Shown here: positions 16,501 through 49,462 of the stretch, in pieces
How the letters are laid out: each line of letters begins with the position of its first letter
Position numbering within the stretch: the stretch's first letter is position 1
DNA from: Auanema rhodensis
Taxonomy: Eukaryota > Animalia > Nematoda
Direction of reading: 5' to 3'
Assembly (NCBI GenBank): GCA_964057225.1
Contig: OZ059898.1
Coordinates: 11,346,001-11,410,000 of the forward strand
DNA: 64,000 bases
Notes under the pieces: generated by a model
The model's input: the letters and a program-made list of their open reading frames with translations, nothing else
Told to the model about the DNA's origin: nothing
Databases searched by the model: none
Made by a program: the position numbers and the translations under genes

Positions 16501-16834
16501 TCCGTTATGCTCTCACGTCGATCCTATAGACCAATAAAGCCTACAAGATGAGTGTGATAGTATTCCAGATGTAGCGGTAGATGAAGAGCATAATGGATAA
16601 ACATAAGACTCGAGAAAGAAAGGTTTATTATGTCTACATGATTACAATAAGTTATAGAAGTCTACCTAAAGATATAAAGTGAAAGAGAGCTAAGAAAGGA
16701 AGACCAACCATCCATAGTCATTCCATAAGGCAAAGCTGAAGTCTGTGTTCCATATGAAGGGCGTGTCGTCCTCTCTCAGCCTCATGTCGTCTGATTCTAA
16801 CCCGCCTGCTACGTATTGATTTCCGAATGGAACG
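13520..16834 (-). mobile_element. Non-autonomous family A LTR element, copy N1 (3315 bp)
   Basis: 337-bp LTRs at 13520-13856 (3') and 16498-16834 (5'), PBS 16485-16497. Gag N-terminal fragment joined at 14813/14814 to the integrase C-terminal tail. Confidence 0.95.
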
Positions 16835-22800: not shown

Positions 22801-25800
22801 ATTGATTTCTAGTCAATCTCCTTAACCACTCGGACATGACTGCTTGTAGAAGGAATATACTTTACAGTTAAAGTGATAGACGCAATGATCTCGTACTTTT
22901 TGGAATAAGATCAAAAGGGATCAAAAAATTGATTTCTCATGCAAAATATTCGCAGTCAGCAGGATTCGAACCTACGCGGGCAGAGCCCAATTGATTTCTA
23001 GTCAATCTCCTTAACCACTCGGACATGACTGCTTGTAGAAGGAATATACTTTACAGTTAAAGTGATAGACGCAATGATCTCGTACTTTTTGGAATAAGAT
23101 CAAAAGGGATCAAAAAATTGATTTCTCATGCAAAATATTCGCAGTCAGCAGGATTCGAACCTACGCGGGCAGAGCCCAATTGATTTCTAGTCAATCTCCT
23201 TAACCACTCGGACATGACTGCTTGTAGAAGGAATATACTTTACAGTTAAAGTGATAGACGCAATGATCTCGTACTTTTTGGAATAAGATCAAAAAGAATC
23301 AAAAAATTGATTTCTCATGCAAAATATTCGCAGTCAGCAGGATTCGAACTTACGCGGGCAGAGCCCAATTGATTTCTAGTCAATCTCCTTAACCACTCGG
23401 ACATGACTGCTTGTAGAAGGAATATACTTTACAGTTGAAGTGATAGACGCAATGATCTCGTACTTTTTGGAATAAGATCAAAAAGAATCAAAAAATTGAT
23501 TTCTCATGCAAAATATTCGCAGTCAGCAGGATTCGAACCTACGCGGGCATAGCCCAATTGATTTCTAGTCAATCTCCTTAACCACTCGGACATGACTGCT
23601 TGTAAAAGTAATATACTTTACAGTTAAAATGATAGACGCAATGATCTCCTACTTTTTGGAATAAGATCAAAAGGGATCAAAAAATTGATTTCTCATGCAA
23701 AATATTCGCAGTCAGCAGGATTCGAACCTACGCGGGCAGAGCCCAATTGATTTCTAGTCAATCTCCTTAACCACTCGGACATGACTGCTCGTAAAAGGAA
23801 TATACTTTACAGTTAAAGTGATACACGCAATGATTTCGTACTTTTTGGAATAAGATCAAAAGGGATCAAAAAATTGGATTCTCATGCAAAATATTCGCAG
23901 TCAGCAGGATTCGAACCTACGCGGGCAGAGCCCAATTGATTTCTAGTCAATCTCCTTAACCACTCGGACATGACTGCTCGTAAAAGGAATATACTTTACA
24001 GTTAAAGTGATACACGCAATGATCTCGTACTTTTTGGAATAAGATCAAAAAGAATCAAAAAATTGATTTGTTATGCAAAATATTCGCAGTCAGCAGGATT
24101 CGAACTTACGCGGGCAGAGCCCAATTGATTTCTAGTCAATCTCCTTAACCACTCGGACATGACTGCTTGTAGAAGGAATATACTTTACAGTTGAAGTGAT
24201 AGACGCAATGATCTCGTACTTTTTGGAATAAGATCAAAAAGAATCAAAAAATTGATTTCTCATGCAAAATATTCGCAGTCAGCAGGATTCGAACCTACGC
24301 GGGCATAGCCCAATTGATTTCTAGTCAATCTCCTTAACCACTCGGACATGACTGCTTGTAAAAGTAATATACTTTACAGTTAAAATGATAGACGCAATGA
24401 TCTCCTACTTTTTGGAATAAGATCAAAAGGGATCAAAAAATTGATTTCTCATGCAAAATATTCGCAGTCAGCAGGATTCGAACCTACGCGGGCAGAGCCC
24501 AATTGATTTCTAGTCAATCTCCTTAACCACTCGGACATGACTGCTCGTAAAAGGAATATACTTTACAGTTAAAGTGATACACGCAATGATTTCGTACTTT
24601 TTGGAATAAGATCAAAAGGGATCAAAAAATTGGATTCTCATGCAAAATATTCGCAGTCAGCAGGATTCGAACCTACGCGGGCAGAGCCCAATTGATTTCT
24701 AGTCAATCTCCTTAACCACTCGGACATGACTGCTTGTAAAAGTAATATACTTTACAGTTAAAGTGATAGCCGCAATGATTTCGTACATATTAGAATTAGA
24801 TCAAAAAGCATCAAAAAATTGATTTGTCATGCAAAATATTCGCAGTCAGCAGGATTCGAACCTACGCGGGCAGAGCCCAATTGATTTCTAGTCAATCTCC
24901 TTAACCACTCGGACATGACTGCTTGTAAAAGGAATATACTTTACAGTTAAAGTGATAGACGCAATGATCTCGTACTTTTTGGAATAAGATCAAAAGGGAT
25001 CAAAAAATTGATTTCTCATACAAAATATTCGCAGTCAGCAGGATTCGAACCTACGCGGGCAGAGCCCAATTGATTTCTAGTCAATCTCCTTAACCACTCG
25101 GACATGACTGCTTGTAGAAGGAATATACTTTACAGTTAAAGTGATAGACGCAATGATCTCGTACTATTTGGAATAAGATCAAAAGGGATCAAAAAGTTGA
25201 TTTGTCATGCAAAATATTCGCAGTCAGCAGGATTCGAACCTACGCGGGCAGAGCCCATTTGATTTCTAGTCAATCTCCTTAACCACTCGGACATGACTGC
25301 TTGTAGAAGGAATATACTTTACAGTTAAAGTGATAGACGCAATGATCTCGTACTTTTTGGAATAAGATCGAAAGGGATCAAAAAATTGATTTCTCATGCA
25401 AAATATTCGCAGTCAGCAGGATTCGAACCTACGCGGGCAGAGCCCAATTGATTTCTAGTCAATCTCCTTAACCACTCGGACATGACTGCATGTATAAGGA
25501 ATATACTTTACAGTTAAAGTGATAGACGCAATGATCTCGTACTTTTTGGAATAAGATCAAATGGGATCAAAAAATTGATTTGTCATGCAAAATATTCGCA
25601 GTCAGCAGGATTCGAACCTACGCGGGCAGAGCCCAATTGATTTCTAGTCAATCTCCTGAACCACTCGGACATGACTGCTCGTAAAAGGAATATACTTTAC
25701 AGTTAAAGTGATACACGCAATGATTTCGTACTTTTTGGAATAAGATCAAAAGGGATCAAAAAATTGAATTCTCATGCAAAATATTCGCAGTCAGCAGGAT

Positions 25801-27238
25801 TCGAACCTACGCGGGCAGAGCCCAATTGATTTCTAGTCAATCTCCTTAACCACTCGGACATGACTGCTTGTAAAAGTAATATACTTTACAGTTAAAGTGA
25901 TAGCCGCAATGATTTCGTACATATTAGAATTAGATCAAAAAGCATCAAAAAATTGATTTGTCATGCAAAATATTCGCAGTCAGCAGGATTCGAACCTACG
26001 CGGGCAGAGCCCAATTGATTTCTAGTCAATCTCCTTAACCACTCGGACATGACTGCTTGTAAAAGTAATATACTTTACAGTTAAAATGATAGACGCAATG
26101 ATCTCGTACTATTTGGAATAAGATCAAAAGGGATCAAAAAGTTGATTTCTCATGCAAAATATTCGCAGTCAGCAGGATTCGAACCTACGCGTGCAGAGCC
26201 CAATTGATTTCTAGTCAATCTCCTTAACCACTCGGACATGACTGCTTGTAGAAGGAATTTACTTTACAGTTAAAGTGGTAGACGCAATGATCTCGTACTT
26301 TTTGGAATAAGAACAAATGGGATCAAAAAATTGATTTCTCATGCAAAATATTTGCAGTCAGCATGATTCGAACCTACGCGGGCAGAGCCCAATTGATTTC
26401 TAGTCAATCTCCTTAACCACTCGGACATGACTGCTTGTAAAAGGAATATACTTTACAGTTAAAGTGATAGACGCAATGATTTCGTACATATTGGAATTAG
26501 ATCAAAAAGCATCAAAAAATTGAATTCTCATGCAAAATATTCGCAGTCAGCAGGATTCAAACCTACGCGGGCAGAGCCCAATTGATTTCTAGTCAATCTC
26601 CTTAACCACTCGGACATGACTGCTTGTAGAAGGAATATACTTTACAGTTAAAGTGATAGACGCAATAATCTCGTACTTATTGGAATTAGATCAAAAAGCA
26701 TCAAAAAAGTGATTTCTCATGCAAAATATTCGCAGTCAGCAGGATTCGAACCTACGCGGGCAGAGCCCAATTGATTTCTAGTCAATCTCCTTAACCACTC
26801 GGACATGACTGCTTGTAGAAGGAATTTACTTTACAGTTAAAGTGGTAGACGCAATGATCTCGTACTTTTTGGAATAAGATCAAATGGGATCAAAAAATTG
26901 ATTTCTCATGCAAAATATTCGCAGTCAGCATGATTCGAACCTACGCGGGCAGAGCCCAATTGATTTCTAGTCAATCTCCTTAACCACTCGGACATGACTG
27001 CTTGTAGAAGGAATATACTTTACAGTTGAAGTGATAGACGCAATGATCTTGTACTTTTTGGAATAAGATATAAATGGGATCAAAAAATTGATTTCTCATG
27101 CAAAATATTCGCAGTCAGCAGGATTCGAACCTACGCGGGCAGAGCCCAATTGATTTCTAGTCAATCTCCTTAACCACTCGGACATGACTGCTTGTAGAAG
27201 GAATATACTTTACAGTTAAAGTGATAGACGCAATGATC
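16835..27238 (-). repeat. tRNA-Ser(AGA) tandem array block 2, 55 genes
   Basis: Genes from 16903-16984 to 27110-27191, 189-bp period. Confidence 0.97.
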
Positions 27239-30200
27239 CGTTCCGTTATGCTCTCACGTCGATCCTATAGACCAATAAAGCCTACAAGATGAGTGTGATA
27301 GTATTCCAGATGTAGCGGTAGATAAAGAGCATAATGGATAAACATAAGACTCAAGAAAGAAAGGTTTATTATGTCTACATAATTACAATAAGTTATAAAA
27401 GTATACATAAAGATATAAAGTGAAAGAGAGCTAAGAAAGGAAGACCAACCATCCATAGTCATTCCATAAGGCAAAGCTGAAGTCTGTGTTCCATATGAAG
27501 GGCGTGTCGTCCTCTCTCAGCCTGATGTCGTCTGATTCCAACCCGCCTGCTACGTATTGATTTCCGAATGGAAAGTGCCATTTTTTCGAGTTTATGTCGC
27601 GTCCTCGCGAATAGCAAAATATGTGGCTTGTTCCAATCGTAGCAGAAGGTTTAGATTTAAAAATCAAAAATTACAATTTTAACATAAAAATAGTAAAGAT
27701 AAATTACAATATAATGTTAAACAATATTATGTGCAAAGAATTCAATACAAATTATTTGAAAATACATGAATATTAAGAAATAAAATAATCTTTTAGAATA
27801 CCAGGGCTATATTTTGTCAGCGAGAGTGCGCAAAATAGCTTTTTAGGCACGACGCTGCATGTCTAACTTGTTTGAGTATAGAGAAACGAGAGTCATGCTA
27901 TATTATCGATGGAGCTAGCATGTTTCCTCAGCGTATTCAAAGCAAATTGTAATAATAAAAAAATGAAAATAAATTAAATCCCATATAATTTCCGGAATTG
28001 AATCATTAACTACTTGATAAGGACTGTTGCTCAGATGAATATGCAATATAATGTCTCTTATCTTTCATTTCTTCTTTATTCACGGGAAATTATTTGAAAT
28101 TGATGTTTTTTTTCGAAAAATTGAAGTTTTATAATCATATATGCTTTGAAACTGAAATGCTTTTTGATTATTAGCTTACATCTCGTCTTACTCAAGTTTT
28201 TCAATGATATAATAATATTAATAGCTCTGGTTTTTTAAAAGAGAGTTGATACAAAGTTTTACAATAATTTTATCAATCTCGAAATTATTTCTTTCATCGT
28301 CTTCTTCTTGGTGGTAGCCAATTTTGGTCCGATGGGTCTTCTGGTTCTGTTTCTTCAGTAGAGTCATAGTTATCGTTACCATTTATGACTTTTATGATCT
28401 CAATATCGCTGTCGTCGTCCGTGTCATAAGTCGTTGTATTTGATCGCAAAAGTTTGAGATTGTCTTTGTGTATGTCTTGAATTTTTCCAAATGGATTCTT
28501 GAGTTGTACCATGTTTCCTTCAACGTTGATGACTTTTTAGCAGTAACTGGTGTTTGTTCTTCGACTATGATGGATGTTTCTTCTCTTCCTGGTGGTACGT
28601 GATCCTCGTCGCTCAATCGTTCAATAGGTGAATAAGTGCCTGCACGAGGAGTAAAGAATTTTTCGGTTTTGTGCTCGGCTTTCTGCTCGTCTTCGATTAT
28701 AGCGATGCTCTGCGCGCGAGCTTGGCTTCTGGTGAGTGGAGCTGAGTCTCGCAGATCAAAATCAGTTCGTGTACTGAGAAGTACAGCTGATCGGAATCGC
28801 TTATCCACTTTGGTAGCGCTCTTGGTTTGGAAAAACCTTGAGTGTTTAGTAACGTGGGGGATTTTGAGACGTTAATGAGTGTTATGGATAAGGAGTTTTG
28901 GAAAAGGAGGGAGAAAGCTGTGAGTAACTGGTTTGTATAGTCGGCGTTAAGGAATGAATCTAAGTTGTGGCCTTTAACAGAGATCCGCCTACTACCGTAT
29001 GAAAATTTGGACTTTGTTCGCTTTCCAATTTAATATTCTTAAATGTATATAATTCAACCAGTTTGTATATGTTCAAAAATGTTCAGTGCTCACTTGATTG
29101 ATGCCTGAGCAATCTCATTAGTCCTTATTCCCATTTTTTTTTCTTTTTCTGACGATTCTGATCTTCTTGGACTCACGAGTGATCGAAAATGCCACGAAAA
29201 TGGACTTTGGTAAATGTTCAAAGGATTTTAGCGGTTTTCGTAATGTACATTCGTAATAGCATTACTTTTTAAGGAAGCAATTTGGAAAACGAATGAGTAT
29301 CGTAGTCCCATCATGATCAGAAATCTAGTTTTAAAATTATGGCTAGGAATAGATGACTAAAGATTACAATAACTATAATTAAAGAATTAAGGTGTTTAGG
29401 AATGAGTCTTATGCCTCAAAACAACAATAACGGTATGAGGAAGGTGACATATAGTAAGGGGAGAAAATCCAAACTGATATGCTTAAGCCAACACGACCTG
29501 ATAGACAATCACTAATAATAATTCAGTTCGTAAAATTGTACAGGATTTTTCGGACTATAGCGATCTTAAAATTCACTTTTCATAATATTCCTCCCATTTA
29601 GGTGTGGTTTCCCGTGTAAATTCAATGCGTTATCAAAATATTTTTGGATGTTAATGGCAAAAAGTTGTCTGAACAGCAATGTAACGCAAAATAAAATAGT
29701 CCTGATCGCAAAATATGAAATAAACTCAATTTGGTGCACAAAATTGTTTCATCCACAAAAATAAAGAAATAACCGTGGCTATTCTTTCCTCGAAGCCAAA
29801 ATCAATCCTTATAAGGAGAAAGTGTGGGCATAAATCTCAAAAAAAATATCCTTAGGTGAATTTGTTCACTAATTCATCCTAGGGTCCTCAAAAATGCTTC
29901 GAGTTCGGGTAACAGAGTATTTGATGTTAACAGCAAGGATATAAAAATTGTTGGGTTCAGACACACAGAAAATTGTGAACAAACGGGAAAACATAACTTC
30001 TTTTTCAAAAAATATAAAATATCCATCTCCAAAAGGAGTGGTCCTTGCATCTGTTCCCTTTTAAACGTTGTTGGCCCCACCGTATTGTGTTAAGACATGG
30101 AGTAGATGGTTTAGAGATATAAGAGAATTCAGATTCAATGAATTGTATTGAAAATAACGAAATATAAGAGAAAATAGTCAAGAAATCAAGATAAAATGTT

Positions 30201-30795
30201 CGAGGTGGAACCTCCACGTTCCGTTATGCTCTCACGTCGATCCTATAGACCAATAAAGCCTACAAGATGAGTGTGATAGTATTCCAGATGTAGCGGTAGA
30301 TGAAGAGCATAATGGATAAACATAAGACTCGAGAAAGAAAGGTTTATTATGTCTACATGATTACAATAAGTTATAGAAGTCTACCTAAAGATATAAAGTG
30401 AAAGAGAGCTAAGAAAGGAAGACCAACCATCCATAGTCATTCCATAAGGCAAAGCTGAAGTCTGTGTTCCATATGAAGGGCGTGTCGTCCTCTCTCAGCC
30501 TCATGTCGTCTGATTCTAACCCGCCTGCTACGTATTGATTTCCGAATGGAACGCAATGATCTCGTACTTATCGGAATTAAATCAAAAGGGATCAAAAAAG
30601 TGTGTTCTAGTGCAAAATATTCGCAGTCAGCAGGATTCGAACCTACGCGGGCAGAGCCCAATTGATTTCTAGTCAATCTCCTTAACCACTCGGACATGAC
30701 TGCTTGTAGAAGGAATATACTTTACAGTTAAAGTGATAGACGCAATGATCTCGTACTTTTTGGAATAAGATCAAAAGGGATCAAAAAATTGATTT
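24253..30795. repeat. ~6.5-kb segmental duplication of ~10534-17076 (offset 13719)
   Basis: Same order of rare unit variants (e.g. GGCATAGCC at 10587/24306, 190-bp unit, GTGTGTTCTAGTG spacer) and the same element with the same junctions. Confidence 0.9.
27239..30553 (-). mobile_element. Non-autonomous family A LTR element, copy N2 (duplicate of N1)
   Basis: Same ORF set and junctions as N1, shifted by 13719; LTRs at 27239-27575 and 30217-30553. Confidence 0.95.
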
Positions 30796-32300
30796 GTCAT
30801 GCAAAATATTCGCAGTCAGCAGGATTCGAACCTACGCGGGCAGAGCCCAATTGATTTCTAGTCAATCTCCTTAACCACTCGGACATGACTGCTTGTAGAA
30901 GGAATATACTTTACAGTTGAAGTGATAGACGCCGTTCCGTTATGCTCCTGCGTCGATAATATAAACCATTGTAGTTTATACCATGACGCGAATAGTATTC
31001 CTTGGTGTAGCGGTAGGAATACAGAGCATAAGGTCAATCATAAGATAAAAGAGAGAAAGATTTATTGGCATGAAACTACAACAATAATATACAAAGATAA
31101 AGATACAATACAATAAGATAAATATAAGTATAAAGACTAAACTACAAGCCGTCCATGAGCTTGCTAAGAGGCGAACTCCCGACCAAGGGAACGAGGGAAG
31201 GCGGAGCCATTCCTCGGTCCTCTGGTCGTCTGGCTCTAACCCTTCAGCTACATATATGGGGAGTCCGAATGGAACGACGCAATGATTTCGTACATATTAG
31301 AATTAGATCAAAAAGCATCAAAAAATTGATTTTTCATGCAAAATATTCGCAGTCAGCAGGATTCGAACCTACGCGGGCAGAGCCCAATTGATTTCTAGTC
31401 AATCTCCTTAACCACTCGGACATGACTGCTTGTAGAAGGAATATACTTTACAGTTGAAGTGATAGACGCAATGATTTCGTACATATTAGAATTAGATCAA
31501 AAAGCATCAAAAAATTGATTTGTCATGCAAAATATTCGCAGTCAGCAGGATTCGAACCTACGCGGGCAGAGCCCAATTGATTTCTAGTCAATCTCCTTAA
31601 CCACTCGGACATGACTGCTTGTAGAAGGAATATACTTTACAGTTGAAGTGATAGACGCAATGATTTCGTACATATTAGAATTAGATCAAAAAGCATCAAA
31701 AAATTGATTTGTCATGCAAAATATTCGCAGTCAGCAGGATTCGAACCTACACGGGCAGAGCCCAATTGATTTCTAGTCAATCTCCTTAACCACTCGGACA
31801 TGACTGCTTGTAGAAGGAATATACTTTACAGTTAAAGTGATAGACGCAATGATCTCGTACTTTTTGGAATAAGATCAAAAGGGATCAAAAAATTGATTTG
31901 TCATGCAAAATATTCGCAGTCAGCAGGATTCGAACCTACGCGGGCAGAGCCCAATTGATTTCTAGTCAATCTCCTTAACCACTCGGACATGACTGCTTGT
32001 AGAAGGAATATACTTTACAGTTGAAGTGATAGACGCAATGATTTCGTACATATTAGAATTAGATCAAAAAGCATCAAAAAATTGATTTGTCATGCAAAAT
32101 ATTCGCAGTCAGCAGGATTCGAACCTACGCGGGCAGAGCCCAATTGATTTCTAGTCAATCTCCTTAACCACTCGGACATGACTGCTTGTAGAAGGAATAT
32201 ACTTTACAGTTGAAGTGATAGACGCAATGATTTCGTACATATTAGAATTAGATCAAAAAGCATCAAAAAATTGATTTCTCATGCAAAATATTCGCAGTCA
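30554..32300 (-). repeat. tRNA-Ser(AGA) array block 3: 7 intact genes, 1 split gene, interrupted by a solo LTR
   Basis: Genes at 30622, 30811, 31348, 31537, 31726, 31915, 32104; split copy starts at 32293. Confidence 0.95.
30933..31276 (-). mobile_element. Solo LTR of family B (344 bp), TSD ACGC
   Basis: Reverse complement of the 49463-49807 LTR with a few differences; ACGC at 30929-30932 and 31277-31280. Confidence 0.95.
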
Positions 32301-38600: not shown

Positions 38601-41600
38601 GATCAAAAGGGATCATAAAATTGATTTCTCATGCAAAATATTCGCAGTCAGCAGGATTCGAACCTACGCGGGCAGAGCCCAATTGATTTCTAGTCAATCT
38701 CCTTAACCACTCGGACATGACTGCTTGTAAAAGGAATATACTTTACACTTGAAGTGATAGACGCAATGAATTCGTACATATAGGAATTAGATCAAAAAGC
38801 ATCAAAAAATTGATTTCTCATGCAAAATATTCGCAGTCAGCAGGATTCGAACCTACGCGGGCAGAGCCCAATTGATTTCTAGTCAATCTCCTTAACCACT
38901 CGGACATGACTGCTTGTATAAGGAATATACTTTACAGTTAAAGTGATAGACGCAATGATCTCGTACTTTTTTGAATAAGATCAAATGGGATCATAAAATT
39001 GATTTCTCATGCAAAATATTCGCAGTCAGCAGGATTCGAACCTACGCGGGCAGAGCCCAATTGATTTCTAGTCAATCTCCTTAACCACTCGGACATGACT
39101 GCTTGTAAAAGGAATATACTTTACAGTTAATGTGATAGACGCAATGATCTCGTACTTTTTGGAATAAGATCAAAAGGGATCATAAAATTGATTTCTCATG
39201 CAAAATATTCGCAGTCAGCAGGATTCGAACCTACGCGGGCAGAGCCCAATTGATTTCTAGTCAATCTCCTTAACCACTCGGACATGACTGCTTGTATAAG
39301 GAATATACTTTACAGTTAAAGTGATAGACGCAATGATCTCGTACTTTTTGGAATAAGATCAAATGGGATCATAAAATTGATTTCTCATGCAAAATATTCG
39401 CAGTCAGCAGGATTCGAACCTACGCGGGCAGAGCCCAATTGATTTCTAGTCAATCTCCTTAACCACTCGGACATGACTGCTTGTAAAAGGAATATACTTT
39501 ACAGTTAAAGTGATAGACGCAATGATCTCGTACTTTTTGGAATAAGATCAAATGGGATCATAAAATTGATTTCTCATGCAAAATATTCGCAGTCAGCAGG
39601 ATTCGAACCTACGCGGGCAGAGCCCAATTGATTTCTAGTCAATCTCCTTAACCACTCGGACATGACTGCTTGTAAAAGGAATATACTTTACAGTTAATGT
39701 GATAGACGCAATGATCTCGTACTTTTTGGAATAAGATCAAAAGGGATCATAAAATTGATTTCTCATGCAAAATATTCGCAGTCAGCAGGATTCGAACCTA
39801 CGCGGGCAGAGCCCAATTGATTTCTAGTCAATCTCCTTAACCACTCGGACATGACTGCTTGTAAAAGGAATATACTTTACACTTAAAGTGATAGACGCAA
39901 TGATTTCGTACATATAGGAATTAGATCAAAAGGGATCATAAAATTGATTTCTCATGCAAAATATTCGCAGTCAGCAGGATTCGAACCTACGCGGGCAGAG
40001 CCCAATTGATTTCTAGTCAATCTCCTTAACCACTCGGGCATGACTGCTTGTAAAAGGAATATACTTTACACTTAAAGTGATAGACGCAATGATTTCGTAC
40101 ATATAGGAATTAGATCAGAAAGCATCAAAAAATTGATTTCTCATGCAAAATATTCGCAGTCAGCAGGATTCGAACCTACGCGGGCAGAGCCCAATTGATT
40201 TCTAGTCAATCTCCTTAACCACTCGGACATGACTGCTTGTAAAAGGAATATACTTTACACTTAAAGTGATAGACGCAATGATTTCGTACATATAGGAATT
40301 AGATCAGAAAGCATCAAAAAATTGATTTCTCATGCAAAATATTCGCAGTCAGCAGGATTCGAACCTACGCGGGCAGAGCCCAATTGATTTCTAGTCAATC
40401 TCCTTAACCACTCGGACATGACTGCTTGTAAAAGGAATATACTTTACACTTAAAGTGATAGACGCAATGATTTCGTACATATAGGAATTAGATCAAAAGG
40501 GATCATAAAATTGATTTCTCATGCAAAATATTCGCAGTCAGCAGGATTCGAACCTACGCGGGCAGAGCCCAATTGATTTCTAGTCAATCTCCTTAACCAC
40601 TCGGACATGACTGCTTGTAAAAGGAATATACTTTACACTTAAAGTGATAGACGCAATGATTTCGTACATATAGGAATTAGATCAAAAGGGATCATAAAAT
40701 TGATTTCTCATGCAAAATATTCGCAGTCAGCAGGATTCGAACCTACGCGGGCAGAGCCCAATTGATTTCTAGTCAATCTCCTTAACCACTCGGACATGAC
40801 TGCTTGTAAAAGGAATATACTTTACACTTAAAGTGATAGACGCAATGATTTCGTACATATAGGAATTAGATCAGAAAGCATCAAAAAATTGATTTCTCAT
40901 GCAAAATATTCGCAGTCAGCAGGATTCGAACCTACGCGGGCAGAGCCCAATTGATTTCTAGTCAATCTCCTTAACCACTCGGACATGACTGCTTGTAAAA
41001 GGAATATACTTTACAGTTAAAGTGATAGACGCAATGATCTCGTACTTTTTGGAATAAGATCAAAAGGGATCATAAAATTGATTTCTCATGCAAAATATTC
41101 GCAGTCAGCAGGATTCGAACCTACGCGGGCAGAGCCCAATTGATTTCTAGTCAATCTCCTTAACCACTCGGACATGACTGCTTGTAAAAGGAATATACTT
41201 TACACTTAAAGTGATAGACGCAATGATTTCGTACATATAGGAATTAGATCAAAAGGGATCATAAAATTGATTTCTCATGCAAAATATTCGCTGTCAGCAG
41301 GATTCGAACCTACGCGGGCAGAGCCCAATTGATTTCTAGTCAATCTCCTTAACCACTCGGGCATGACTGCTTGTAAAAGGAATATACTTTACACTTAAAG
41401 TGATAGACGCAATGATTTCGTACATATAGGAATTAGATCAGAAAGCATCAAAAAATTGATTTCTCATGCAAAATATTCGCAGTCAGCAGGATTCGAACCT
41501 ACGCGGGCAGAGCCCAATTGATTTCTAGTCAATCTCCTTAACCACTCGGACATGACTGCTTGTAAAAGGAATATACTTTACACTTAAAGTGATAGACGCA

Positions 41601-42070
41601 ATGATTTCGTACATATAGGAATTAGATCAGAAAGCATCAAAAAATTGATTTCTCATGCAAAATATTCGCAGTCAGCAGGATTCGAACCTACGCGGGCAGA
41701 GCCCAATTGATTTCTAGTCAATCTCCTTAACCACTCGGACATGACTGCTTGTAAAAGGAATATACTTTACACTTAAAGTGATAGACGCAATGATTTCGTA
41801 CATATAGGAATTAGATCAAAAGGGATCATAAAATTGATTTCTCATGCAAAATATTCGCAGTCAGCAGGATTCGAACCTACGCGGGCAGAGCCCAATTGAT
41901 TTCTAGTCAATCTCCTTAACCACTCGGACATGACTGCTTGTAAAAGGAATATACTTTACACTTAAAGTGATAGACGCAATGATTTCGTACATATAGGAAT
42001 TAGATCAAAAGGGATCATAAAATTGATTTCTCATGCAAAATATTCGCAGTCAGCAGGATTCGAACCTACG
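35623..42070 (-). repeat. tRNA-Ser(AGA) array block 4: 33 intact genes plus split halves at both ends
   Basis: Genes from 35808 to 41856; split copy starts at 42045. Confidence 0.96.
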
Positions 42071-42318
42071 GGGTCTGAGACGTTTCGTCGTCTCCTATTT
42101 TTACAACCTCTCCCCAGCAAGCCTAACGGTCGTAAATTATACCACACGTGTTGTACTCTCAGTTTTTGGTCGTTTAGACTTCTAAAAATTACCCAAAAAC
42201 TTAAACAGTTCATAAAAAATCAAGGTTTTCAATCTAAACGGCAAGGAGGTTTTTGTGTTAGAAAAAAAAGGTATGGTTCAAAAAATTTATTAGAGTTTAG
42301 TTTTTCAAGTTAAATGAT

Positions 42319-44364
42319 TCAAAAATAAGATTTTCTGGTGTTAAACTTCGCCATCTCCTCGACATATGCTATTATTTCTTGCTGATTAGGCAGTCGGTTA
42401 TTGGAGATGCTCCTAAAGTTTTCAAACTGAACCTCAATCCGTTGTTGCCTCTCAATTACGTTTTTTCTTTTTTTCCTGGCAGGCTCAACATTCGATGACA
42501 AAGCGATCAGGACATGATTAGCCATCAAATTTTCACCATGAAAAAAAGTAATTAATTCAGAAAGAGGAGGATGAGAGCAAGATAAAATAGTCTTCATTTT
42601 ACGGTGAAAAGATTCAACATTATTAGATGTACGAAACTGTTTTATGTCCCATTTGCTCCAATAATGTCGCAAAGGTCCTTCAATCCATGTTTCATTCACA
42701 TAACTGATCATTTGAAGACAAGAAGAATATGATGGATGATCAGAAGAAACAGGAGAATTGAGTAACCCGGACCGTGAGATAAGATCAGTTTGAAGGAAGA
42801 GCAAGCCCAGCAGCCGACCATGCCATTGTTTGATTTCAATGGATTGCTTCTCTGCTTGTGTCAAACCCAGTTGAAGAAACCGTCTGTTCAAGCTCTGAGC
42901 ATAATGAAATGCACATCCTTGAACAGAATTAAAAATAGTTTCAGCTTCCCTTATTACAGCGATCTCAAAATCACAGATAAAAATAAGGTTTTCAACTATG
43001 CAACCAACGTTGGAGAGAGCTAGTGCAATATGTTGAAGAAGCCTTCTATAAGTGAACCTACTCTTATTTTTTAAAATGGAATAGAAAAGAGGTACAGTTG
43101 TTCCATTTCTGCAACCGCCCATGATGGTATATGTTTGTTCCATATCCAAAGGCTGGTATTTGAAACAACCGTCCCCAAGCAAATGAGTTAAACCATGCTG
43201 AACAGCTAGTTCCAAACAAAATGTATCGAAATACAAATGAAACTCGCTGTCATGAAAATGCAAGAACGTACGACCATTGATAGTTTTAGACAGAGACAGA
43301 GGAACATTGGTCATGGATGTTCTTAAGTCTTTACGAGAACTTAAAGCCCTTGTAATAGCTCTACGTCTACTGTCATAGCCACCATGAAACCAAGCAGAGG
43401 AAACTTCTTGCTTTTCATGCTCTTCTAACTCAGATTCATGAAATATTTTTTTTATTTCATTGACAAATAAGGAATATGCTTTCATCTCAAAACATGAGTC
43501 TGAACTTTTGATATTCTGAGTTAGAGAGTATGTGATATTTTTGCATTTGTTAATAGAAAACAAAAATGGATCACAATGATAGTTTTGAGCAATAGGATTT
43601 TCGAGAAATACATTATTTTCTACTTTGATAGAAGTGTATTTACCCAAATGTTTACAACCTGTGCAACGATAAATAGAATAAGCTTTTTGAGAACTTTTAC
43701 TACTGAATTGGTAGCGATACAGCAAGTTTTCAAATTTATATTCTAAACAGGGGTGTACACCCTGCTTAGAAGGCGCAATGAGAGCGGCGTATGAGTTAGG
43801 ATTTGCAGATTGCGAAGAAAATGAAGAAGAAGGAGAGGGAACAGAAGAAGAAGGAGAGGGAACAGAAGAAGAAGGAGAGGGAACAGAAGAAGAAGGAGAG
43901 AGAACAGGTAAAGAAGGAGAGGAAACAGAAGGAGGAGAAGAAGAAAGAGAAGATGACGGTGAAGAATGAACGGCAGAAGAAGAAGAAGAAGGCTGAATAG
44001 AAAGATGTGAAGTAGAAGAAGAGAACAGTGGAACGCTGTTGACAGTAGGAACAGTAACTGTAGCAACAGATTCAACTGAAGAAGATGCCGCAGATGAATT
44101 TGCTAGAGAAAGAGCAGAAGCAAAATTAACATTTTGCTGCCTCAATGGAGGGATATTAAAAGATGGAAGAGTGAAATTCAAAAATGAGAGTGAAGTTACA
44201 TCATTTGAATAAACTTCAAGATTCTGAGTATTTACCGAAGAATTATTAAAAAAGATAGTTATGTTCTCCGAAGGAACATTATCAAAAGGCTGAGAAACAA
44301 GAACAGATTTACCCTGAGCGTTAATCATCAGAGAAAATGGACAGAAAGTAGAAGGAAAAATCAT
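42319..44364 (-). CDS. MULE DDE transposase, 681 aa
   Basis: LLGDGCFK, FICDFE, GCAFH (CxxH), RTSNNVESFH motifs; FLYWCH/WRKY-like YRC..C...H region; Ser/Pro-rich N-terminal linker. Confidence 0.92.
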   Translation of the reverse strand: MIFPSTFCPFSLMINAQGKSVLVSQPFDNVPSENITIFFNNSSVNTQNLEVYSNDVTSLSFLNFTLPSFNIPPLRQQNVNFASALSLANSSAASSSVESVATVTVPTVNSVPLFSSSTSHLSIQPSSSSSAVHSSPSSSLSSSPPSVSSPSLPVLSPSSSVPSPSSSVPSPSSSVPSPSSSFSSQSANPNSYAALIAPSKQGVHPCLEYKFENLLYRYQFSSKSSQKAYSIYRCTGCKHLGKYTSIKVENNVFLENPIAQNYHCDPFLFSINKCKNITYSLTQNIKSSDSCFEMKAYSLFVNEIKKIFHESELEEHEKQEVSSAWFHGGYDSRRRAITRALSSRKDLRTSMTNVPLSLSKTINGRTFLHFHDSEFHLYFDTFCLELAVQHGLTHLLGDGCFKYQPLDMEQTYTIMGGCRNGTTVPLFYSILKNKSRFTYRRLLQHIALALSNVGCIVENLIFICDFEIAVIREAETIFNSVQGCAFHYAQSLNRRFLQLGLTQAEKQSIEIKQWHGRLLGLLFLQTDLISRSGLLNSPVSSDHPSYSSCLQMISYVNETWIEGPLRHYWSKWDIKQFRTSNNVESFHRKMKTILSCSHPPLSELITFFHGENLMANHVLIALSSNVEPARKKRKNVIERQQRIEVQFENFRSISNNRLPNQQEIIAYVEEMAKFNTRKSYF
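43823..43906. repeat. 21-bp coding minisatellite (VPSPSSS) in transposase
   Basis: GAAGAAGAAGGAGAGGGAACA x3 plus one variant; x4 plus variant in copy 2 (47231-47335). Confidence 0.9.
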
Positions 44365-44712
44365 GATGAACGAGAAAAGATGAGAAAGTGTGAATAAGCA
44401 AACTTATCGAAAGAAAAGATAAACTAACAACTATTACTATGAACTCACGTAACTGTTGACTTGAAACTGTTTGATGATAGCCTGGTTGATAGAACTGTAT
44501 GTTTATTTTAATTTCTGCTTTTTTCAATTTATATTTTGATGGCACTTCAAGGTATGTAGCCACTTATAACTGAATTCTATAGATTTATAGCTTTAATAGC
44601 ACCCCGAGTTACATGAACACTGACACTTGTCAGCACATTATCATAAAGTTTGCCCTCTAATGATCAGCCTGAACTAGTTCACAAACTAGAGACGACGAAA
44701 CGTCCGCCACCC

Positions 44713-45478
44713 CGAACCTACGCGGGCAGAGCCCAATTGATTTCTAGTCAATCTCCTTAACCACTCGGACATGACTGCTTGCAGAAGGAATATACTTTAC
44801 AGTTAAAGTGATAGACGCCATGATCTCGTACTTATTGGAATTAGATCAAAAAGGATCAAAAAATTGATTTCTCATGCAAAATATTCGCAGTCAGCAGGAT
44901 TCGAACCTACGCGGGCAGAGCCCAATTGATTTCTAGTCAATCTCCTTAACCACTCGGACATGACTGCTTGTAGAAGGAATATACTATACAGTTCAAGTGA
45001 TAGACGCAATGATCTCGTACTTTTTGGAATAAGATCAAAAAGGATCAAAAAATTGATTTATCATGCAAAATATTCGCAGTCAGCAGGATTCGAACCTACG
45101 CGGGCAGAGCCCAATTGATTTCTAGTCAATCTCCTTAACCACTCGGACATGACTGCTTGTAGAAGGAATATACTTTACAGTTAAAGTGATAGACGCAATG
45201 ATTTCGTACATATAGGAATTAGATCAAAAAGCATCAAAAAATTGATTTATCATGCAAAATATTCGCAGTCAGCAGGATTCGAACCTACGCGGGCAGAGCC
45301 CAATTGATTTCTAGTCAATCTCCTTAACCACTCGGACATGACTGCTTGTAGAAGGAATATACTTTACAGTTAAAGTGATAGACGCAATGATCTCGTACTT
45401 ATTGAAATTAGATCAAATGGGATCAAAAAGTTGATTTCTCATGCAAAATATTCGCAGTCAGCAGGATTCGAACCTACG
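44713..45478 (-). repeat. tRNA-Ser(AGA) array block 5: 3 intact genes between the MULEs
   Basis: Genes at 44886, 45075, 45264, plus two split halves. Confidence 0.95.
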
Positions 45479-48141
45479 CGGGCAGAGACGTTTCGTCGTC
45501 TCCTATTTTTACAACCTCTCCCCAGCAAACATAACGGTCGTAAATTATACCACACGTGTTGTACTCTCAGTTTTTGGTCGTTTAGACTTCTAAAAATTAC
45601 CCAAAAACTTAAACAGTTCATAAAAAATCAAGGTTTTCAATCTAAACGGCAAGGAGGTTTTTGTGTTAGAAAAAAAAGATATGGTTCAAAAAATTTATTA
45701 GAGTTTAGTTTTTCAAGTTAAATGATTCAAAAATAAGATTTTCTGGTGTTAAACTTCGCCATCTCCTCGACATATGCTATTATTTCTTGCTGATTAGGCA
45801 GTCGGTTATTGGAGATGCTCCTAAAGTTTTCAAACTGAACCTCAATCCGTTGTTGCCTCTCAATTACGTTTTTTCTTTTTTTCCTGGCAGGCTCAACATT
45901 CGATGACAAAGCGATCAGGACATGATTAGCCATCAAATTTTCACCATGAAAAAAAGTAATTAATTCAGAAAGAGGAGGATGAGAGCAAGATAAAATAGTC
46001 TTCATTTTACGGTGAAAAGATTCAACATTATTAGATGTACGAAACTGTTTTATGTCCCATTTGTTCCAATAATGTCGCAAAGGTCCTTCAATCCATGTTT
46101 CATTCACATAACTGATCATTTGAAGACAAGAAGAATATGATGGATGATCAGAAGAAACAGGAGAATTGAGTAACCCGGACCGTGAGATAAGATCAGTTTG
46201 AAGGAAGAGCAAGCCCAGCAGCCGACCATGCCATTGTTTGATTTCAATGGATTGCTTCTCTGCTTGTGTCAAACCCAGTTGAAGAGACCGTCTGTTCAAG
46301 CTCTGAGCATAATGAAATGCACATCCTTGAACAGAATTAAAAATAGTTTCAGCTTCCCTTATTACAGCGATCTCAAAATCACAGATAAAAATAAGGTTTT
46401 CAACTATGCAACCAACGTTGGAGAGAGCTAGTGCAATATGTTGAAGAAGCCTTCTATAAGTGAACCTACTCTTATTTTTTAAAATGGAATAGAAAAGAGG
46501 TACAGTTGTTCCATTTCTGCAACCGCCCATGATGGTATATGTTTGTTCCATATCCAAAGGCTGGTATTTGAAACAACCGTCCCCAAGCAAATGAGTTAAA
46601 CCATGCTGAACAGCTAGTTCCAAACAAAATGTATCGAAATACAAATGAAACTCGCTGTCATGAAAATGCAAGAACGTACGACCATTGATAGTTTTAGACA
46701 GAGACAGAGGAACATTGGTCATGGATGTTCTTAAGTCTTTACGAGAACTTAAAGCCCTTGTAATAGCTCTACGTCTACTGTCATAGCCACCATGAAACCA
46801 AGCAGAGGTAACTTCTTGCTTTTCATGCTCTTCTAACTCAGATTCATGAAATATTTTTTTTATTTCATTGACAAATAAGGAATATGCTTTCATCTCAAAA
46901 CATGAGTCTGAACTTTTGATATTCTGAGTTAGAGAGTATGTGATATTTTTGCATTTGTTAATAGAAAACAAAAATGGATCACAATGATAGTTTTGAGCAA
47001 TAGGATTTTCGAGAAATACATTATTTTCTACTTTGATAGAAGTGTATTTACCCAAATGTTTACAACCTGTGCAACGATAAATAGAATAAGCTTTTTGAGA
47101 ACTTTTACTACTGAATTGGTAGCGATACAGCAAGTTTTCAAATTTATATTCTAAACAGGGGTGTACACCCTGCTTAGAAGGCGCAATGAGAGCGGCGTAT
47201 GAGTTAGGATTTGCAGATTGCGAAGAAAATGAAGAAGAAGGAGAGGGAACAGAAGAAGAAGGAGAGGGAACAGAAGAAGAAGGAGAGGGAACAGAAGAAG
47301 AAGGAGAGGGAACAGAAGAAGAAGGAGAGAGAACAGGTAAAGAAGGAGAGGAAACAGAAGGAGGAGAAGAAGAAAGAGAAGATGACGGTGAAGAATGAAC
47401 GGCAGAAGAAGAAGAAGAAGGCTGAATAGAAAGATGTGAAGTAGAAGAAGAGAACAGTGGAACGCTGTTGACAGTAGGAACAGTAACTGTAGCAACAGAT
47501 TCAACTGAAGAAGATGCCGCAGATGAATTTGCTAGAGAAAGAGCAGAAGCAAAATTAACATTTTGCTGCCTCAATGGAGGGATATTAAAAGATGGAAGAG
47601 TGAAATTCAAAAATGAGAGTGAAGTTACATCATTTGAATAAACTTCAAGATTCTGAGTATTTACCGAAGAATTATTAAAAAAGATAGTTATGTTCTCCGA
47701 AGGAACATTATCAAAAGGCTGAGAAACAAGAACAGATTTACCCTGAGCGTTAATCATCAGAGAAAATGGACAGAAAGTAGAAGGAAAAATCATGATGAAC
47801 GAGAAAAGATGAGAAAGTGTGAATAAGCAAACTTATCGAAAGAAAAGATAAACTAACAACTATTACTATGAACTCACGTAACTGTTGACTTGAAACTGTT
47901 TGATGATAGCCTGGTTGATAGAACTGTATGTTTATTTTAATTTCTGCTTTTTTCAATTTATATTTTGATGGCACTTCAAGGTATGTAGCCACTTATAACT
48001 GAATTCTATAGATTTATAGCTTTAATAGCACCCCGAGTTACATGAACACTGGCACTTGTCAGCACATTATCATAAAGTTTGCCCTCTAATGATCAGCCTG
48101 AACTAGTTCACAAACTAGAGACGACGAAACGTCCGCCACCC
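45479..48141 (-). mobile_element. MULE copy 2, ~2663 bp, same tRNA position; left terminal 9 nt read as tRNA sequence
   Basis: Near-identical to copy 1 (+21 bp, a few SNPs); right end ...CGCCACCC followed by GAACCTACG. Confidence 0.93.
45727..47793 (-). CDS. MULE DDE transposase, 688 aa
   Basis: Same motifs as copy 1; one extra 7-aa repeat and 3 substitutions (S>T, F>S, S>N). Confidence 0.92.
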   Translation of the reverse strand: MIFPSTFCPFSLMINAQGKSVLVSQPFDNVPSENITIFFNNSSVNTQNLEVYSNDVTSLSFLNFTLPSFNIPPLRQQNVNFASALSLANSSAASSSVESVATVTVPTVNSVPLFSSSTSHLSIQPSSSSSAVHSSPSSSLSSSPPSVSSPSLPVLSPSSSVPSPSSSVPSPSSSVPSPSSSVPSPSSSFSSQSANPNSYAALIAPSKQGVHPCLEYKFENLLYRYQFSSKSSQKAYSIYRCTGCKHLGKYTSIKVENNVFLENPIAQNYHCDPFLFSINKCKNITYSLTQNIKSSDSCFEMKAYSLFVNEIKKIFHESELEEHEKQEVTSAWFHGGYDSRRRAITRALSSRKDLRTSMTNVPLSLSKTINGRTFLHFHDSEFHLYFDTFCLELAVQHGLTHLLGDGCFKYQPLDMEQTYTIMGGCRNGTTVPLFYSILKNKSRFTYRRLLQHIALALSNVGCIVENLIFICDFEIAVIREAETIFNSVQGCAFHYAQSLNRRSLQLGLTQAEKQSIEIKQWHGRLLGLLFLQTDLISRSGLLNSPVSSDHPSYSSCLQMISYVNETWIEGPLRHYWNKWDIKQFRTSNNVESFHRKMKTILSCSHPPLSELITFFHGENLMANHVLIALSSNVEPARKKRKNVIERQQRIEVQFENFRSISNNRLPNQQEIIAYVEEMAKFNTRKSYF

Positions 48142-49462
48142 GAACCTACGCGGGCAGAGCCCAATTGATTTCTAGTCAATCTCCTTAACCACTCGGACAT
48201 GACTGCTTGTAAAAGGAATATACTTTACACTTAAAGTGATAGACGCAATGATTTCGTACATATAGGAATTAGATCAGAAAGCATCAAAAAATTGATTTCT
48301 CATGCAAAATATTCGCAGTCAGCAGGATTCGAACCTACGCGGGCAGAGCCCAATTGATTTCTAGTCAATCTCCTTAACCACTCGGACATGACTGCTTGTA
48401 AAAGGAATATACTTTACAGTTAAAGTGATAGACGCAATGATCTCGTACTTTTTGGAATAAGATCAAAAGGGATCATAAAATTGATTTCTCATGCAAAATA
48501 TTCGCAGTCAGCAGGATTCGAACCTACGCGGGCAGAGCCCAATTGATTTCTAGTCAATCTCCTTAACCACTCGGACATGACTGCTTGTAAAAGGAATATA
48601 CTTTACAGTTAAAGTGATAGACGCAATGATCTCGTACTTTTTGGAATAAGATCAAAAGGGATCATAAAATTGATTTCTCATGCAAAATATTCGCAGTCAG
48701 CAGGATTCGAACCTACGCGGGCAGAGCCCAATTGATTTCTAGTCAATCTCCTTAACCACTCGGACATGACTGCTTGTAAAAGGAATATACTTTACACTTA
48801 AAGTGATAGACGCAATGATTTCCTACATATAGGAATTAGATCAGAAAGCATCAAAAAATTGATTTCTCATGCAAAATATTCGCAGTCAGCAGGATTCGAA
48901 CCTACGCGGGCAGAGCCCAATTGATTTCTAGTCAATCTCCTTAACCACTCGGACATGACTGCTTGTAAAAGGAATATACTTTACACTTAAAGTGATAGAT
49001 GCAATGATTTCGTACATATAGGAATTAGATCAGAAAGCATCAAAAAATTGATTTCTCATGCAAAATATTCGCAGTCAGCAGGATTCGAACCTACGCGGGC
49101 AGAGCCCAATTGATTTCTAGTCAATCTCCTTAACCACTCGGACATGACTGCTTGTAAAAGGAATATACTTTACAGTTAAAGTGATAGACGCAATGATCTC
49201 GTACTTTTTGGAATAAGATCAAAAGGGATCATAAAATTGATTTCTCATGCAAAATATTCGCAGTCAGCAGGATTCGAACCTACGCGGGCAGAGCCCAATT
49301 GATTTCTAGTCAATCTCCTTAACCACTCGGACATGACTGCTTGTAAAAGTAATATACTTTACAGTTCAAGTGATAGACGCAATGATCTCGTACTTTTTGG
49401 AATAAGATCAAATGGGATCAAAAAATTGATTTCTCATGCAAAATATTCGCAGTCAGCAGGAT
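48142..49462 (-). repeat. tRNA-Ser(AGA) array block 6: 6 intact genes plus split halves
   Basis: Genes from 48314 to 49259; split copy starts at 49448. Confidence 0.95.

What the first reader, a model, noticed from the sequence alone, without database searches (positions are those of the whole stretch)
42061..48150. Candidate tRNA-gene-specific Mutator transposon: two intact copies at the same position of the tRNA-Ser B-box
Seen: both MULEs lie in the same orientation and duplicate (C)GAACCTACG, which is CGTAGGTTC(G) on the tRNA strand (T-stem and 5' half of the B-box). The copies differ by several SNPs, a 21-bp repeat unit, junction details and flanking spacer variants. Known: MULEs are normally sequence-nonspecific with ~9-bp TSDs; multicopy RNA-gene targeting is known for Dada (small RNA genes) and Pokey (28S rDNA). 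Inference: two independent hits at one site, i.e. a site-specific MULE that uses the tRNA array as a safe harbour.
Basis: partly seen in the sequence, partly recalled or inferred. Interest (0 to 1): 0.88.

Follow-up and report, generated by a model that had tools for sequence, protein, structure and literature searches.

The report
Composite Mutator transposon inside tRNA-Ser array
Two intact Mutator-type transposons, bracketing four tRNA-Ser repeat units brought from elsewhere, entered one tRNA-Ser gene as a single 6-kb block at almost the same base where they sat before, which hints at a DNA transposon family that aims at tRNA genes.

Summary
Two 99.7%-identical MULEs (42071-44712 and 45479-48141) carry intact 681- and 688-aa DDE transposase ORFs. 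Both split tRNA-Ser(AGA) units of a 189-bp array at the same T-arm/B-box position, in the same orientation.

They are not two separate hits on this array. Deleting 42071-48150 restores 1,235 bp of perfect identity to the array 7 units upstream. MULE1 + 766 bp of foreign tRNA-Ser units + MULE2 is therefore one 6,071-bp insertion with a clean 9-bp TSD and an empty paralogous site (40739-40747). MULE2's inner tip is destroyed; both outer tips are intact. This fits a composite "macrotransposon".

The inner flanks show the donor copies sat at the same tRNA position, with the right boundary shifted by 1 nt. So the site was probably used at least twice. Contigs from related genomes show the element's right end abutting a B-box-like motif, and the 5' half of another tRNA containing an A box.

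Tropism for tRNA or Pol III genes is plausible but unproven, because I could not census the genome. Copying by recombination within the array remains a live rival.

First readers of this scan also noted MULEs in other tRNA and 5S genes on other pieces of this genome. Those notes are unverified.

The parts
42045..42070 (-). 3' part (26 nt) of the interrupted local tRNA-Ser(AGA) unit. It ends in the left copy of the TSD, GAACCTACG (42062-42070).
   Evidence: Sequence; unit consensus.
42071..44712 (-). MULE1, an autonomous Mutator-like element of 2,642 bp. TIRs are at 42071-42094 and 44689-44712. Its left tip, GGGTCTGAG, is intact and forms the outer end of the composite.
42319..44364 (-). MULE1 transposase ORF: 681 aa, no intron needed. 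It has a CxxC...HxC zinc finger (C234, C237, H264, C266), the catalytic residues D398, D465 and E584, and a C484xxH487 motif.
43806..43920 (-). 21-bp tandem repeats inside the ORF, encoding Ser/Pro-rich heptads. MULE2 has one more unit.
44713..45478 (-). Passenger DNA: 766 bp, which is 4 x 189 + 10, of tRNA-Ser array from another place. It holds three whole tRNA-Ser genes (44886-44967, 45075-45156, 45264-45345) and two part-genes. Its four spacer variants occur nowhere else in the window.
45479..48141 (-). MULE2, 2,663 bp. Its inner (left) tip at 45479-45487 reads CGGGCAGAG, which is tRNA sequence, instead of GGGTCTGAG. Its right tip, ...CCGCCACCC, is intact and forms the outer end of the composite.
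45727..47793 (-). MULE2 transposase ORF, 688 aa and intact. It differs from MULE1's by 3 substitutions and one 7-aa repeat.
48142..48206 (-). 5' part (65 nt) of the same interrupted local tRNA-Ser unit. It begins with the right copy of the TSD, GAACCTACG (48142-48150).
40722..40803 (-). Paralogous uninterrupted tRNA-Ser unit. The empty site, GAACCTACG, is at 40739-40747. It lies in a block (39970-41204) that is 100% identical to the flanks of the composite.

Best explanation
This is a young, apparently autonomous Mutator-like transposon family. Its features are 24-26-nt TIRs, one intron-less DDE/CxxH transposase with an N-terminal zinc finger, and 9-10-bp TSDs.

In this window it is present as one composite 'macrotransposon' of 6,071 bp: MULE1, then 766 bp of tRNA-Ser array carried from a previous location, then MULE2.

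Proposed sequence of events:
1. In a donor tRNA-Ser array, two copies sat four units apart at the same T-arm position.
2. MULE2's left tip was then overwritten with tRNA sequence. This could be conversion or break repair from an intact unit, ending in the GAG microhomology. MULE2 could no longer move alone.
3. Transposase paired MULE1's intact left end with MULE2's intact right end.
4. It integrated the whole block, by a 9-bp staggered cut, into tRNA positions 48-56 (T stem and start of the B box) of a local unit.

The new site is the same as the old one to within 1 nt. Related genomes also show the right end beside a B-box-like motif and inside the A-box/D-arm region of another tRNA. I therefore infer that the family selects the internal promoter regions of tRNA (Pol III) genes. 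Selection could work by direct reading of the conserved T-arm/B-box DNA or by tethering to TFIIIC. Multicopy arrays would serve as a harmless landing ground.

Shown: the composite structure, the empty site, the TSD, the TIRs, and intact ORFs with catalytic residues.
Inferred: transposition rather than recombination as the delivery route; the target preference; how the target is recognised.
For: Single insertion: removing 42071-48150 restores 1,235 bp of perfect identity with the array 1,323 bp upstream. Removing either MULE alone does not.

Foreign passenger DNA: spacers 43-46 are unique in the window and at least 3-5 edits from all others. The outer spacers are identical to several local ones and continue the local order 36-37-37|36-38.

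Outer ends intact, inner left tip destroyed.

Two events: the right junctions differ by one base. MULE1's is inherited from the donor, MULE2's is new.

Internal control for duplication with the array: an LTR element copied with the array at offset 13,719 is 100% identical, flanks included, over about 6.5 kb. The MULE pair instead shows 0.27% divergence inside the elements and about 8% in the flanks.

MULE identity:
- PF10551 at E=1.3e-5.
- 2,851 HMMER relatives, the best E=2.7e-64, named MULE transposase in strongylid and Diploscapter nematodes.
- D398, D465, C484xxH487 and E584 are conserved.

Other contexts in contigs of four coded organisms:
- Contigs stop exactly at 42071 and 44712.
- In X5 the right end is followed by GGGGTTCGATT.
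- In X1 the right end is followed by the reverse complement of a tRNA 5' half with a perfect A box, TGGCGCAGTGG.
- Such motifs occur once (B-box core) and not at all (A box) in 72 kb of non-array sequence.
Against: I could not see the rest of this genome, so no census of copies or target logo exists.

The evidence from other contexts rests on 11- and 29-nt overhangs of short contigs from other, coded organisms. One left-end context in X1 is not recognisably tRNA.

Gap repair or gene conversion from a donor that already had the MULE-4 units-MULE structure could deliver the block with recipient flanks untouched. MULE2's tip shows that such repair does act here. The 6.5-kb duplication shows that array dynamics copy TEs.

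The one-base junction difference lies in a run of C and could be a mutation or an assembly error.

No excision footprints are present in the 141 units of the window.

Two distant relatives (about 30% identity) in other nematodes show no tRNA nearby.

Many other TE families are reported near Pol III genes in this genome. Selection for harmless sites could therefore mimic targeting.
Confidence: 0.5

Rival explanations
1. One ancestral insertion into a tRNA-Ser unit, with no target specificity. All later copies, including this block, arose by array dynamics. Unequal crossing-over made a [MULE + 4 units] repeat in a donor array. Double-strand-break repair or gene conversion then copied MULE-4 units-MULE into this unit.
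For: The array does duplicate TEs with their flanks: about 6.5 kb at 100% identity at offset 13,719. MULE2's left tip has been overwritten with tRNA sequence, a recombination or repair signature. The MULE1-to-MULE2 spacing of 3,408 bp equals one element + 10 bp + 4 units, as a tandem repeat would give.
Against: Both recipient flanks are unconverted right up to the tRNA pieces, with 1,235 bp perfect against the paralog. The outer repeat is a clean 9 bp, while the inherited right junction implies a boundary 1 nt away. Contigs from other genomes place the right end in other tRNA-like contexts.
Confidence: 0.22
2. A sequence-nonspecific MULE that prefers open, nucleosome-free DNA. In a compact genome, only insertions in redundant multicopy genes survive selection, so the tRNA association reflects survivorship rather than targeting.
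For: The same array also holds five LTR-type insertions at varied positions. First-reader notes report many TE families near Pol III genes in this genome (unverified).
Against: Survivorship does not explain reuse of the same nucleotide, within 1 nt, and the same orientation within a 189-bp unit. The chance for a second random hit in the unit is roughly 1 in 378. It also does not explain ends abutting A-box and B-box motifs in other genomes.
Confidence: 0.15
3. One reading: two separate single-element insertions into two units of this array.
For: Same position, same orientation, divergent immediate flanks and junction details.
Against: The four intervening spacers are foreign to the local array. 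The outer flanks join seamlessly when the whole block is removed, but not when either element alone is removed.
Confidence: 0.05
4. Assembly artefact: reads from two array regions, each with one MULE, were mis-joined.
For: Long near-identical tandem arrays are hard to assemble. The junction differences include a homopolymer length.
Against: A random mis-join would not leave a perfect 9-bp TSD and an uninterrupted local higher-order pattern across a 6-kb block. The block is short enough to be spanned by single long reads.
Confidence: 0.03

Closest known systems
Dada DNA transposons (Kojima & Jurka 2013, PMC3706591; PMC8869645)
   Same: DDE/(C/D)xxH transposase. Insertion inside multicopy small-RNA genes, including tRNA genes in arrays. 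Part of the element's end sequence recurs in the target next to the TSD; here the left tip matches 6 of 9 positions with the tRNA letters it displaces.
   Different: Dada makes 6-7-bp TSDs and has no terminal inverted repeats. Each Dada family hits one gene type. This element has 24-26-nt TIRs and 9-10-bp TSDs, its transposase matches the MULE domain and nematode MULE proteins, and it may hit several tRNA types at different internal positions.
Mutator-like elements in animals (Phantom/Muta1 and unnamed nematode MULEs; PMC6446971, PMC5499845)
   Same: Transposase fold markers (D, D, CxxH, E), short TIRs, a single ORF, and TSDs within the 8-11-bp range.
   Different: The MULE survey I read (PMC6446971) does not mention tRNA targeting. 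The nearest database relatives are only about 32% identical, and two of them show no tRNA nearby.
Composite or macrotransposons (bacterial Tn5/Tn10 type; maize Ac/Ds macrotransposons) - from general knowledge
   Same: Two element copies in the same orientation mobilise the DNA between them through the outer ends. A single TSD flanks the whole.
   Different: I know of no description for MULEs. Here the cargo is tRNA genes, and the inner end appears to have been disabled by repair from the target repeat.
tRNA-gene-targeted retroelements (yeast Ty1/Ty3, Dictyostelium TRE5-A/DGLT-A) - from general knowledge
   Same: Use of Pol III genes as safe landing sites in compact genomes, possibly through Pol III factors.
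   Different: Those are retroelements that integrate upstream or downstream of intact tRNA genes. This is a cut-and-paste DNA transposon that integrates inside the gene and splits the A and B boxes.
Pokey (piggyBac, Daphnia 28S rDNA), as cited in PMC3706591
   Same: A DNA transposon with a preferred site in a multicopy RNA gene that also occurs elsewhere.
   Different: Different superfamily, a TTAA target, and an rDNA rather than tRNA target.

Membership tests
Mutator/MULE superfamily | [quoted passage not shown] | tested here: met
   PF10551 scores E=1.3e-5 at 26.0 bits, just under the 27.6-bit cut-off. phmmer finds 2,851 relatives, the top E=2.7e-64, named MULE transposase. D398, D465, C484, H487 and E584 are conserved in at least 90% of 22 sequences.
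Mutator/MULE superfamily | Target-site duplication of 8-11 bp (PMC6446971) | tested here: met
   A 9-bp TSD, GAACCTACG, flanks the composite against an empty paralogous site. The inherited inner junction implies a boundary 1 nt away, giving a 10-bp overlap.
Mutator/MULE superfamily | Terminal inverted repeats | tested here: met
   24-26 nt at 85% complementarity. The 16-nt perfect core occurs 4 times in the window, only at the four ends.
Mutator/MULE superfamily | N-terminal zinc-finger DNA-binding domain | tested here: inconclusive
   A CxxC...HxC pattern at residues 234-266 is conserved in the consensus of relatives. The Pfam RYYR-CCHC match is only E=0.019.
Dada superfamily | 6-7-bp TSD and no TIRs, only subterminal repeats (PMC3706591) | tested here: not met
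   The TSD is 9-10 bp and clear TIRs are present.
Dada superfamily | Dada-type transposase sequence | not tested
   No Dada protein was available to compare. The best family matches are to MULE.
Composite (macro)transposon | Two copies bracketing unrelated DNA, a single TSD around the whole, and an empty site that lacks all of it | tested here: met
Composite (macro)transposon | Delivery by transposase acting on the outer ends, not by recombination | not testable with these tools
   It is consistent with intact outer tips and a dead inner tip. Break repair from a donor could give the same product.
Target-specific transposon of multicopy RNA genes | Most or all copies in the genome lie at the same kind of target, each with its own TSD | tested here: inconclusive
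   At least two events occurred at one tRNA-Ser position. Two further right-end contexts resemble tRNA in other genomes, and one left-end context does not. Scan notes on other pieces were seen as titles only.

The most novel reading that the evidence does not exclude
This would be a lineage of Mutator-superfamily DNA transposons in an animal, probably a rhabditid nematode, that is guided to the internal promoter elements (A box and B box, the TFIIIC sites) of Pol III genes. It would integrate inside tRNA genes, and perhaps 5S genes, of several kinds. As composites, it would carry whole tRNA genes from one array to another. That would make it the first target-selective MULE and a transposon-driven route for spreading tRNA gene arrays.
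Probability: 0.4. Interest if true: 0.85.

Novelty: new variant of a known kind. Interest (0 to 1): 0.68.

Why it matters
Target-selective DNA transposons are very rare. Dada is the only superfamily described as strictly specific, and Pokey is a partial case. MULEs are textbook examples of loosely targeted, mutagenic elements.

A MULE that homes to tRNA genes would be:
- A case of convergence with Dada, R2, Ty3 and TRE5-A.
- A natural safe-harbour integrase with a simple one-protein, short-TIR design.
- A tractable system for asking how a DDE transposase reads a Pol III gene, by DNA sequence or through TFIIIC.

The composite is of interest whatever the targeting mechanism. It shows tRNA genes being moved between arrays as transposon cargo, and a tandem repeat repairing, and thereby crippling, a transposon end.

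Tried and rejected
Searches that led nowhere:
- Exact look-ups of both transposases found no record in public assemblies.
- Word-indexed homology searches with residues 200-681 and with the N-terminal 164 aa found only one weak hit and nothing, respectively. No further copies with flanks could be fetched that way.
- A search of the scan's notes by sequence was blank.

Tests that came back negative:
- Distant nematode relatives were fetched for a test of conserved tRNA association: L001 from Cylicocyclus nassatus and L002 from Cooperia oncophora. No tRNA, no B-box motif near the ends and no Rfam tRNA hit were found. At about 30% identity this says little about this family.
- I looked for excision footprints at the site in all 141 units. 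There are only point variants and no indels.

Ideas tested and rejected:
- Local tandem duplication of [MULE + 4 units]. The inner spacers are not copies of the neighbouring ones.
- Two separate local insertions.

Idea left open:
- The left tip resembles the displaced tRNA letters at 6 of 9 positions. I estimate this at about 1% for one comparison, weaker after allowing for the several comparisons tried. It is a possible Dada-like target-recognition clue, too weak to build on.

Literature: searches found no report of a tRNA-targeting MULE.
Full report
**Setting.** The window is dominated by a head-to-tail array of tRNA-Ser(AGA) genes on the minus strand, 141 units with a 189-bp period. Of these, 103 units are identical to the consensus and 38 carry point changes. 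None has an indel at the site in question. Several mobile elements interrupt the array:
- A 3.3-kb LTR-bounded element, present three times.
- A solo LTR.
- A 12-kb Gypsy-like element.
- The two MULEs of the finding.

**The observation.** Reading the junctions directly gives MULE1 at 42071-44712 and MULE2 at 45479-48141.
- Both have 24-26-nt terminal inverted repeats. The 16-nt core occurs only at the four ends, against 0.02 expected by chance.
- Both lie in the same orientation. The transposase ORFs are intact at 681 and 688 aa, on the same strand as the tRNA.
- Both are bounded by the tRNA letters GAACCTACG. On the tRNA strand this is CGTAGGTTC, positions 48-56, covering the T stem and the first three bases of the T loop/B box.

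The copies differ as follows:
- 7 internal substitutions in about 2.63 kb (0.27%).
- One 21-bp repeat unit.
- One C at the right junction.
- Three changes in the first 9 nt of MULE2's left tip. MULE1 reads GGGTCTGAG there, agreeing with the right TIR. MULE2 reads CGGGCAGAG, exactly the tRNA sequence that follows the site in an intact gene.
- The adjacent 107-bp spacers differ at 9 positions on each side.

**What the element is.**
- The protein matches Pfam MULE (PF10551) at E=1.3e-5, just under the curated cut-off.
- A full HMMER scan finds 2,851 relatives. The best, at E=2.7e-64 and 32% identity, are annotated MULE transposase-domain proteins of strongylid nematodes and Diploscapter. The host is therefore probably a rhabditid nematode.
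- In an alignment of 22 sequences the catalytic D398, D465 and E584 and the C484xxH487 motif are conserved and present in both copies. A CxxC...HxC zinc finger lies at residues 234-266.
- With TIRs and a 9-10-bp TSD, inside the 8-11-bp MULE range (PMC6446971), the element passes the MULE membership tests.
- It fails those of Dada, which has a 6-7-bp TSD and no TIRs (PMC3706591).

**The pair is one insertion.** The order around the pair is ...36 37 37 [MULE1] 43 44 45 46 [MULE2] 36 38 38...
- Types 43-46 occur nowhere else in the window and are 3-5 edits from any other spacer.
- The outer spacers are identical to several local ones.
- The local array shows 36-37-37-36-38 uninterrupted seven units upstream.

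Deleting 42071-48150, which is the block plus one TSD copy, yields a sequence identical over 1,235 bp to 39970-41204. That identity covers 778 bp left and 457 bp right of the junction. Deleting MULE1 alone leaves at least 12 mismatches, and MULE2 alone at least 20, in +/-300 bp against any register of the array.

So MULE1 + 766 bp (4 units + 10 bp) of foreign tRNA-Ser array + MULE2 is a single 6,071-bp insertion. It has a clean 9-bp TSD and an empty paralogous site at 40739-40747. The insertion is younger than a local 7-unit duplication that has not yet acquired a single substitution. The two MULE copies had already diverged from each other by then.

**An internal control.** The same array shows what "amplified with the array" looks like. 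The LTR element at 13473-16902 and its copy at 27192-30621 sit in a duplication of about 6.5 kb, offset 13,719, that is 100% identical, flanks included. The MULE pair shows the opposite pattern, with near-identical elements and roughly 8% divergent flanks.

**Mechanism.** The outer ends of the block are intact: MULE1's left tip and MULE2's right tip. MULE2's inner left tip is destroyed.

The simplest reading is a composite or macrotransposon.
1. Two copies sat four units apart at the same position of a donor tRNA-Ser array.
2. MULE2's left tip was overwritten from an intact tRNA unit. This could be conversion, or break repair with 9 nt of synthesis, ending in the GAG microhomology.
3. The transposase then paired the next available intact left end with MULE2's right end and moved everything between them.

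Steps shown: the structure, the TSD and the empty site. Steps inferred: that transposase, not recombination, delivered the block.

Break repair from a donor that already had MULE-4 units-MULE would also leave the recipient flanks untouched. MULE2's tip shows that such repair operates here. I give that rival about 0.2.

**Does the family aim at tRNA genes?** Three lines of evidence bear on this.

1. The inner flanks are relics of residence at the same tRNA position elsewhere.
   - The inherited right boundary is CCC|CGAACC and the new one is CCC|GAACC.
   - This gives two integration events within 1 nt, in the same orientation. The chance for a random second hit within a unit is about 1 in 378.
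   - The caveat is that a 1-nt change in a C run could be mutation or assembly error.

2. Contigs of four coded organisms were laid on MULE1.
   - The element is 99-100% identical in all of them.
   - Contigs break exactly at 42071 and 44712, which implies multiple contexts.
   - In X5 the right end is followed by GGGGTTCGATT, a B-box-like motif.
   - In X1 a contig at about the depth of the rest of the element runs from the right end into the reverse complement of AGCAGCGTGGCGCAGTGGAAGCG. This is a tRNA 5' half with a perfect A box; its resemblance to an initiator tRNA is from memory only. The insertion would lie in the D arm.
   - The B-box core occurs once and the A-box pattern never in 72 kb of non-array sequence.
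   - One X1 left-end context is not recognisably tRNA.
   - One X5 contig shows a tRNA-Ser lacking 11 nt beside the site, which is possibly a footprint.

3. First-reader notes on other pieces of this genome list MULEs in a tRNA-Arg gene, at a tRNA 5' end, in a T arm and in 5S genes. I saw only their titles and could not test them.

Together these make tropism for tRNA or Pol III genes plausible; I put it at about 0.55-0.6. Varied positions, over both A-box and B-box regions, would favour tethering to TFIIIC. Reuse of one nucleotide in tRNA-Ser favours direct DNA reading. I cannot decide between the two.

**Against targeting.**
- I have no genome census.
- Many TE families in this genome are reported near Pol III genes, and five LTR-type insertions lie in this array at varied positions. 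Tolerance and selection may therefore contribute.
- Two distant relatives in other nematodes have no tRNA nearby.

**Comparison and novelty.** The element works like Dada: it inserts inside multicopy small-RNA genes and shows some resemblance between its end and its target. By every testable criterion it is a MULE. The MULE survey I read does not mention tRNA targeting, and my literature searches found no such report. I also found no description of a MULE composite carrying tRNA genes, though I did not search for that specifically. I rate it a new variant of a known kind.
- Interest: 0.68.
- Confidence in the composite structure: about 0.9.
- Confidence in delivery by transposition: about 0.65.
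- Confidence in target selectivity: about 0.55-0.6.

Noticed in passing
window 10500-17100 and 24200-30800: A perfect (100%) segmental duplication of about 6.5 kb at offset 13,719. It copies a 3.3-kb LTR-bounded element (13473-16902 = 27192-30621) together with its flanking tRNA-Ser units. This directly shows array dynamics amplifying a TE.
   Followed up: partly
window 13519, 30932, 32300, 49480 (junctions): LTR-type elements with CGTTCC...GGAACG termini sit at varied places in the array. Two lie about 40 and 47 bp upstream of a tRNA 5' end (the 3.3-kb element and a solo LTR, 30893-31347). One lies 8 nt, and one 15 nt, inside the tRNA 3' end; the latter is the 12-kb Gypsy-like element, 49.4-61.6 kb. 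Three junctions show 4-bp TSDs. The 13519 junction appears to show an 8-bp repeat. Other scan notes report LTR insertions 27-70 bp upstream of tRNA genes elsewhere in this genome.
   Followed up: partly
run X6, contig over window 42076-43499: In coded organism D, the left 1.4 kb of the MULE (99.4% identical) is carried by a contig at about 45 times the depth of the rest of the element. It is joined at 42076 to unrelated sequence. An X3 contig also stops fitting the window at 43499. This is probably an amplified non-autonomous derivative.
   Followed up: no
run X5, loose end at window 44718: A contig shows a tRNA-Ser unit that lacks 11 nt (CAGGATTCGAA) ending inside the TSD. This may be an excision footprint. 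No such unit exists among the 141 units in the window.
   Followed up: no
window 42071-42079 versus 44723-44731: MULE1's left tip, GGGTCTGAG, matches the tRNA letters it displaces, CGGGCAGAG, at 6 of 9 positions. The right tip shows no such likeness to its side. This recalls Dada, whose subterminal motif recurs in the target (PMC3706591), but it could be chance.
   Followed up: partly
window 9043-63881: 38 of the 141 tRNA-Ser units carry point substitutions, some in the T loop or acceptor stem, shared in blocks that follow higher-order repeats. Each unit has a TTTT run 5 nt after the tRNA 3' end, so most units look transcribable.
   Followed up: no
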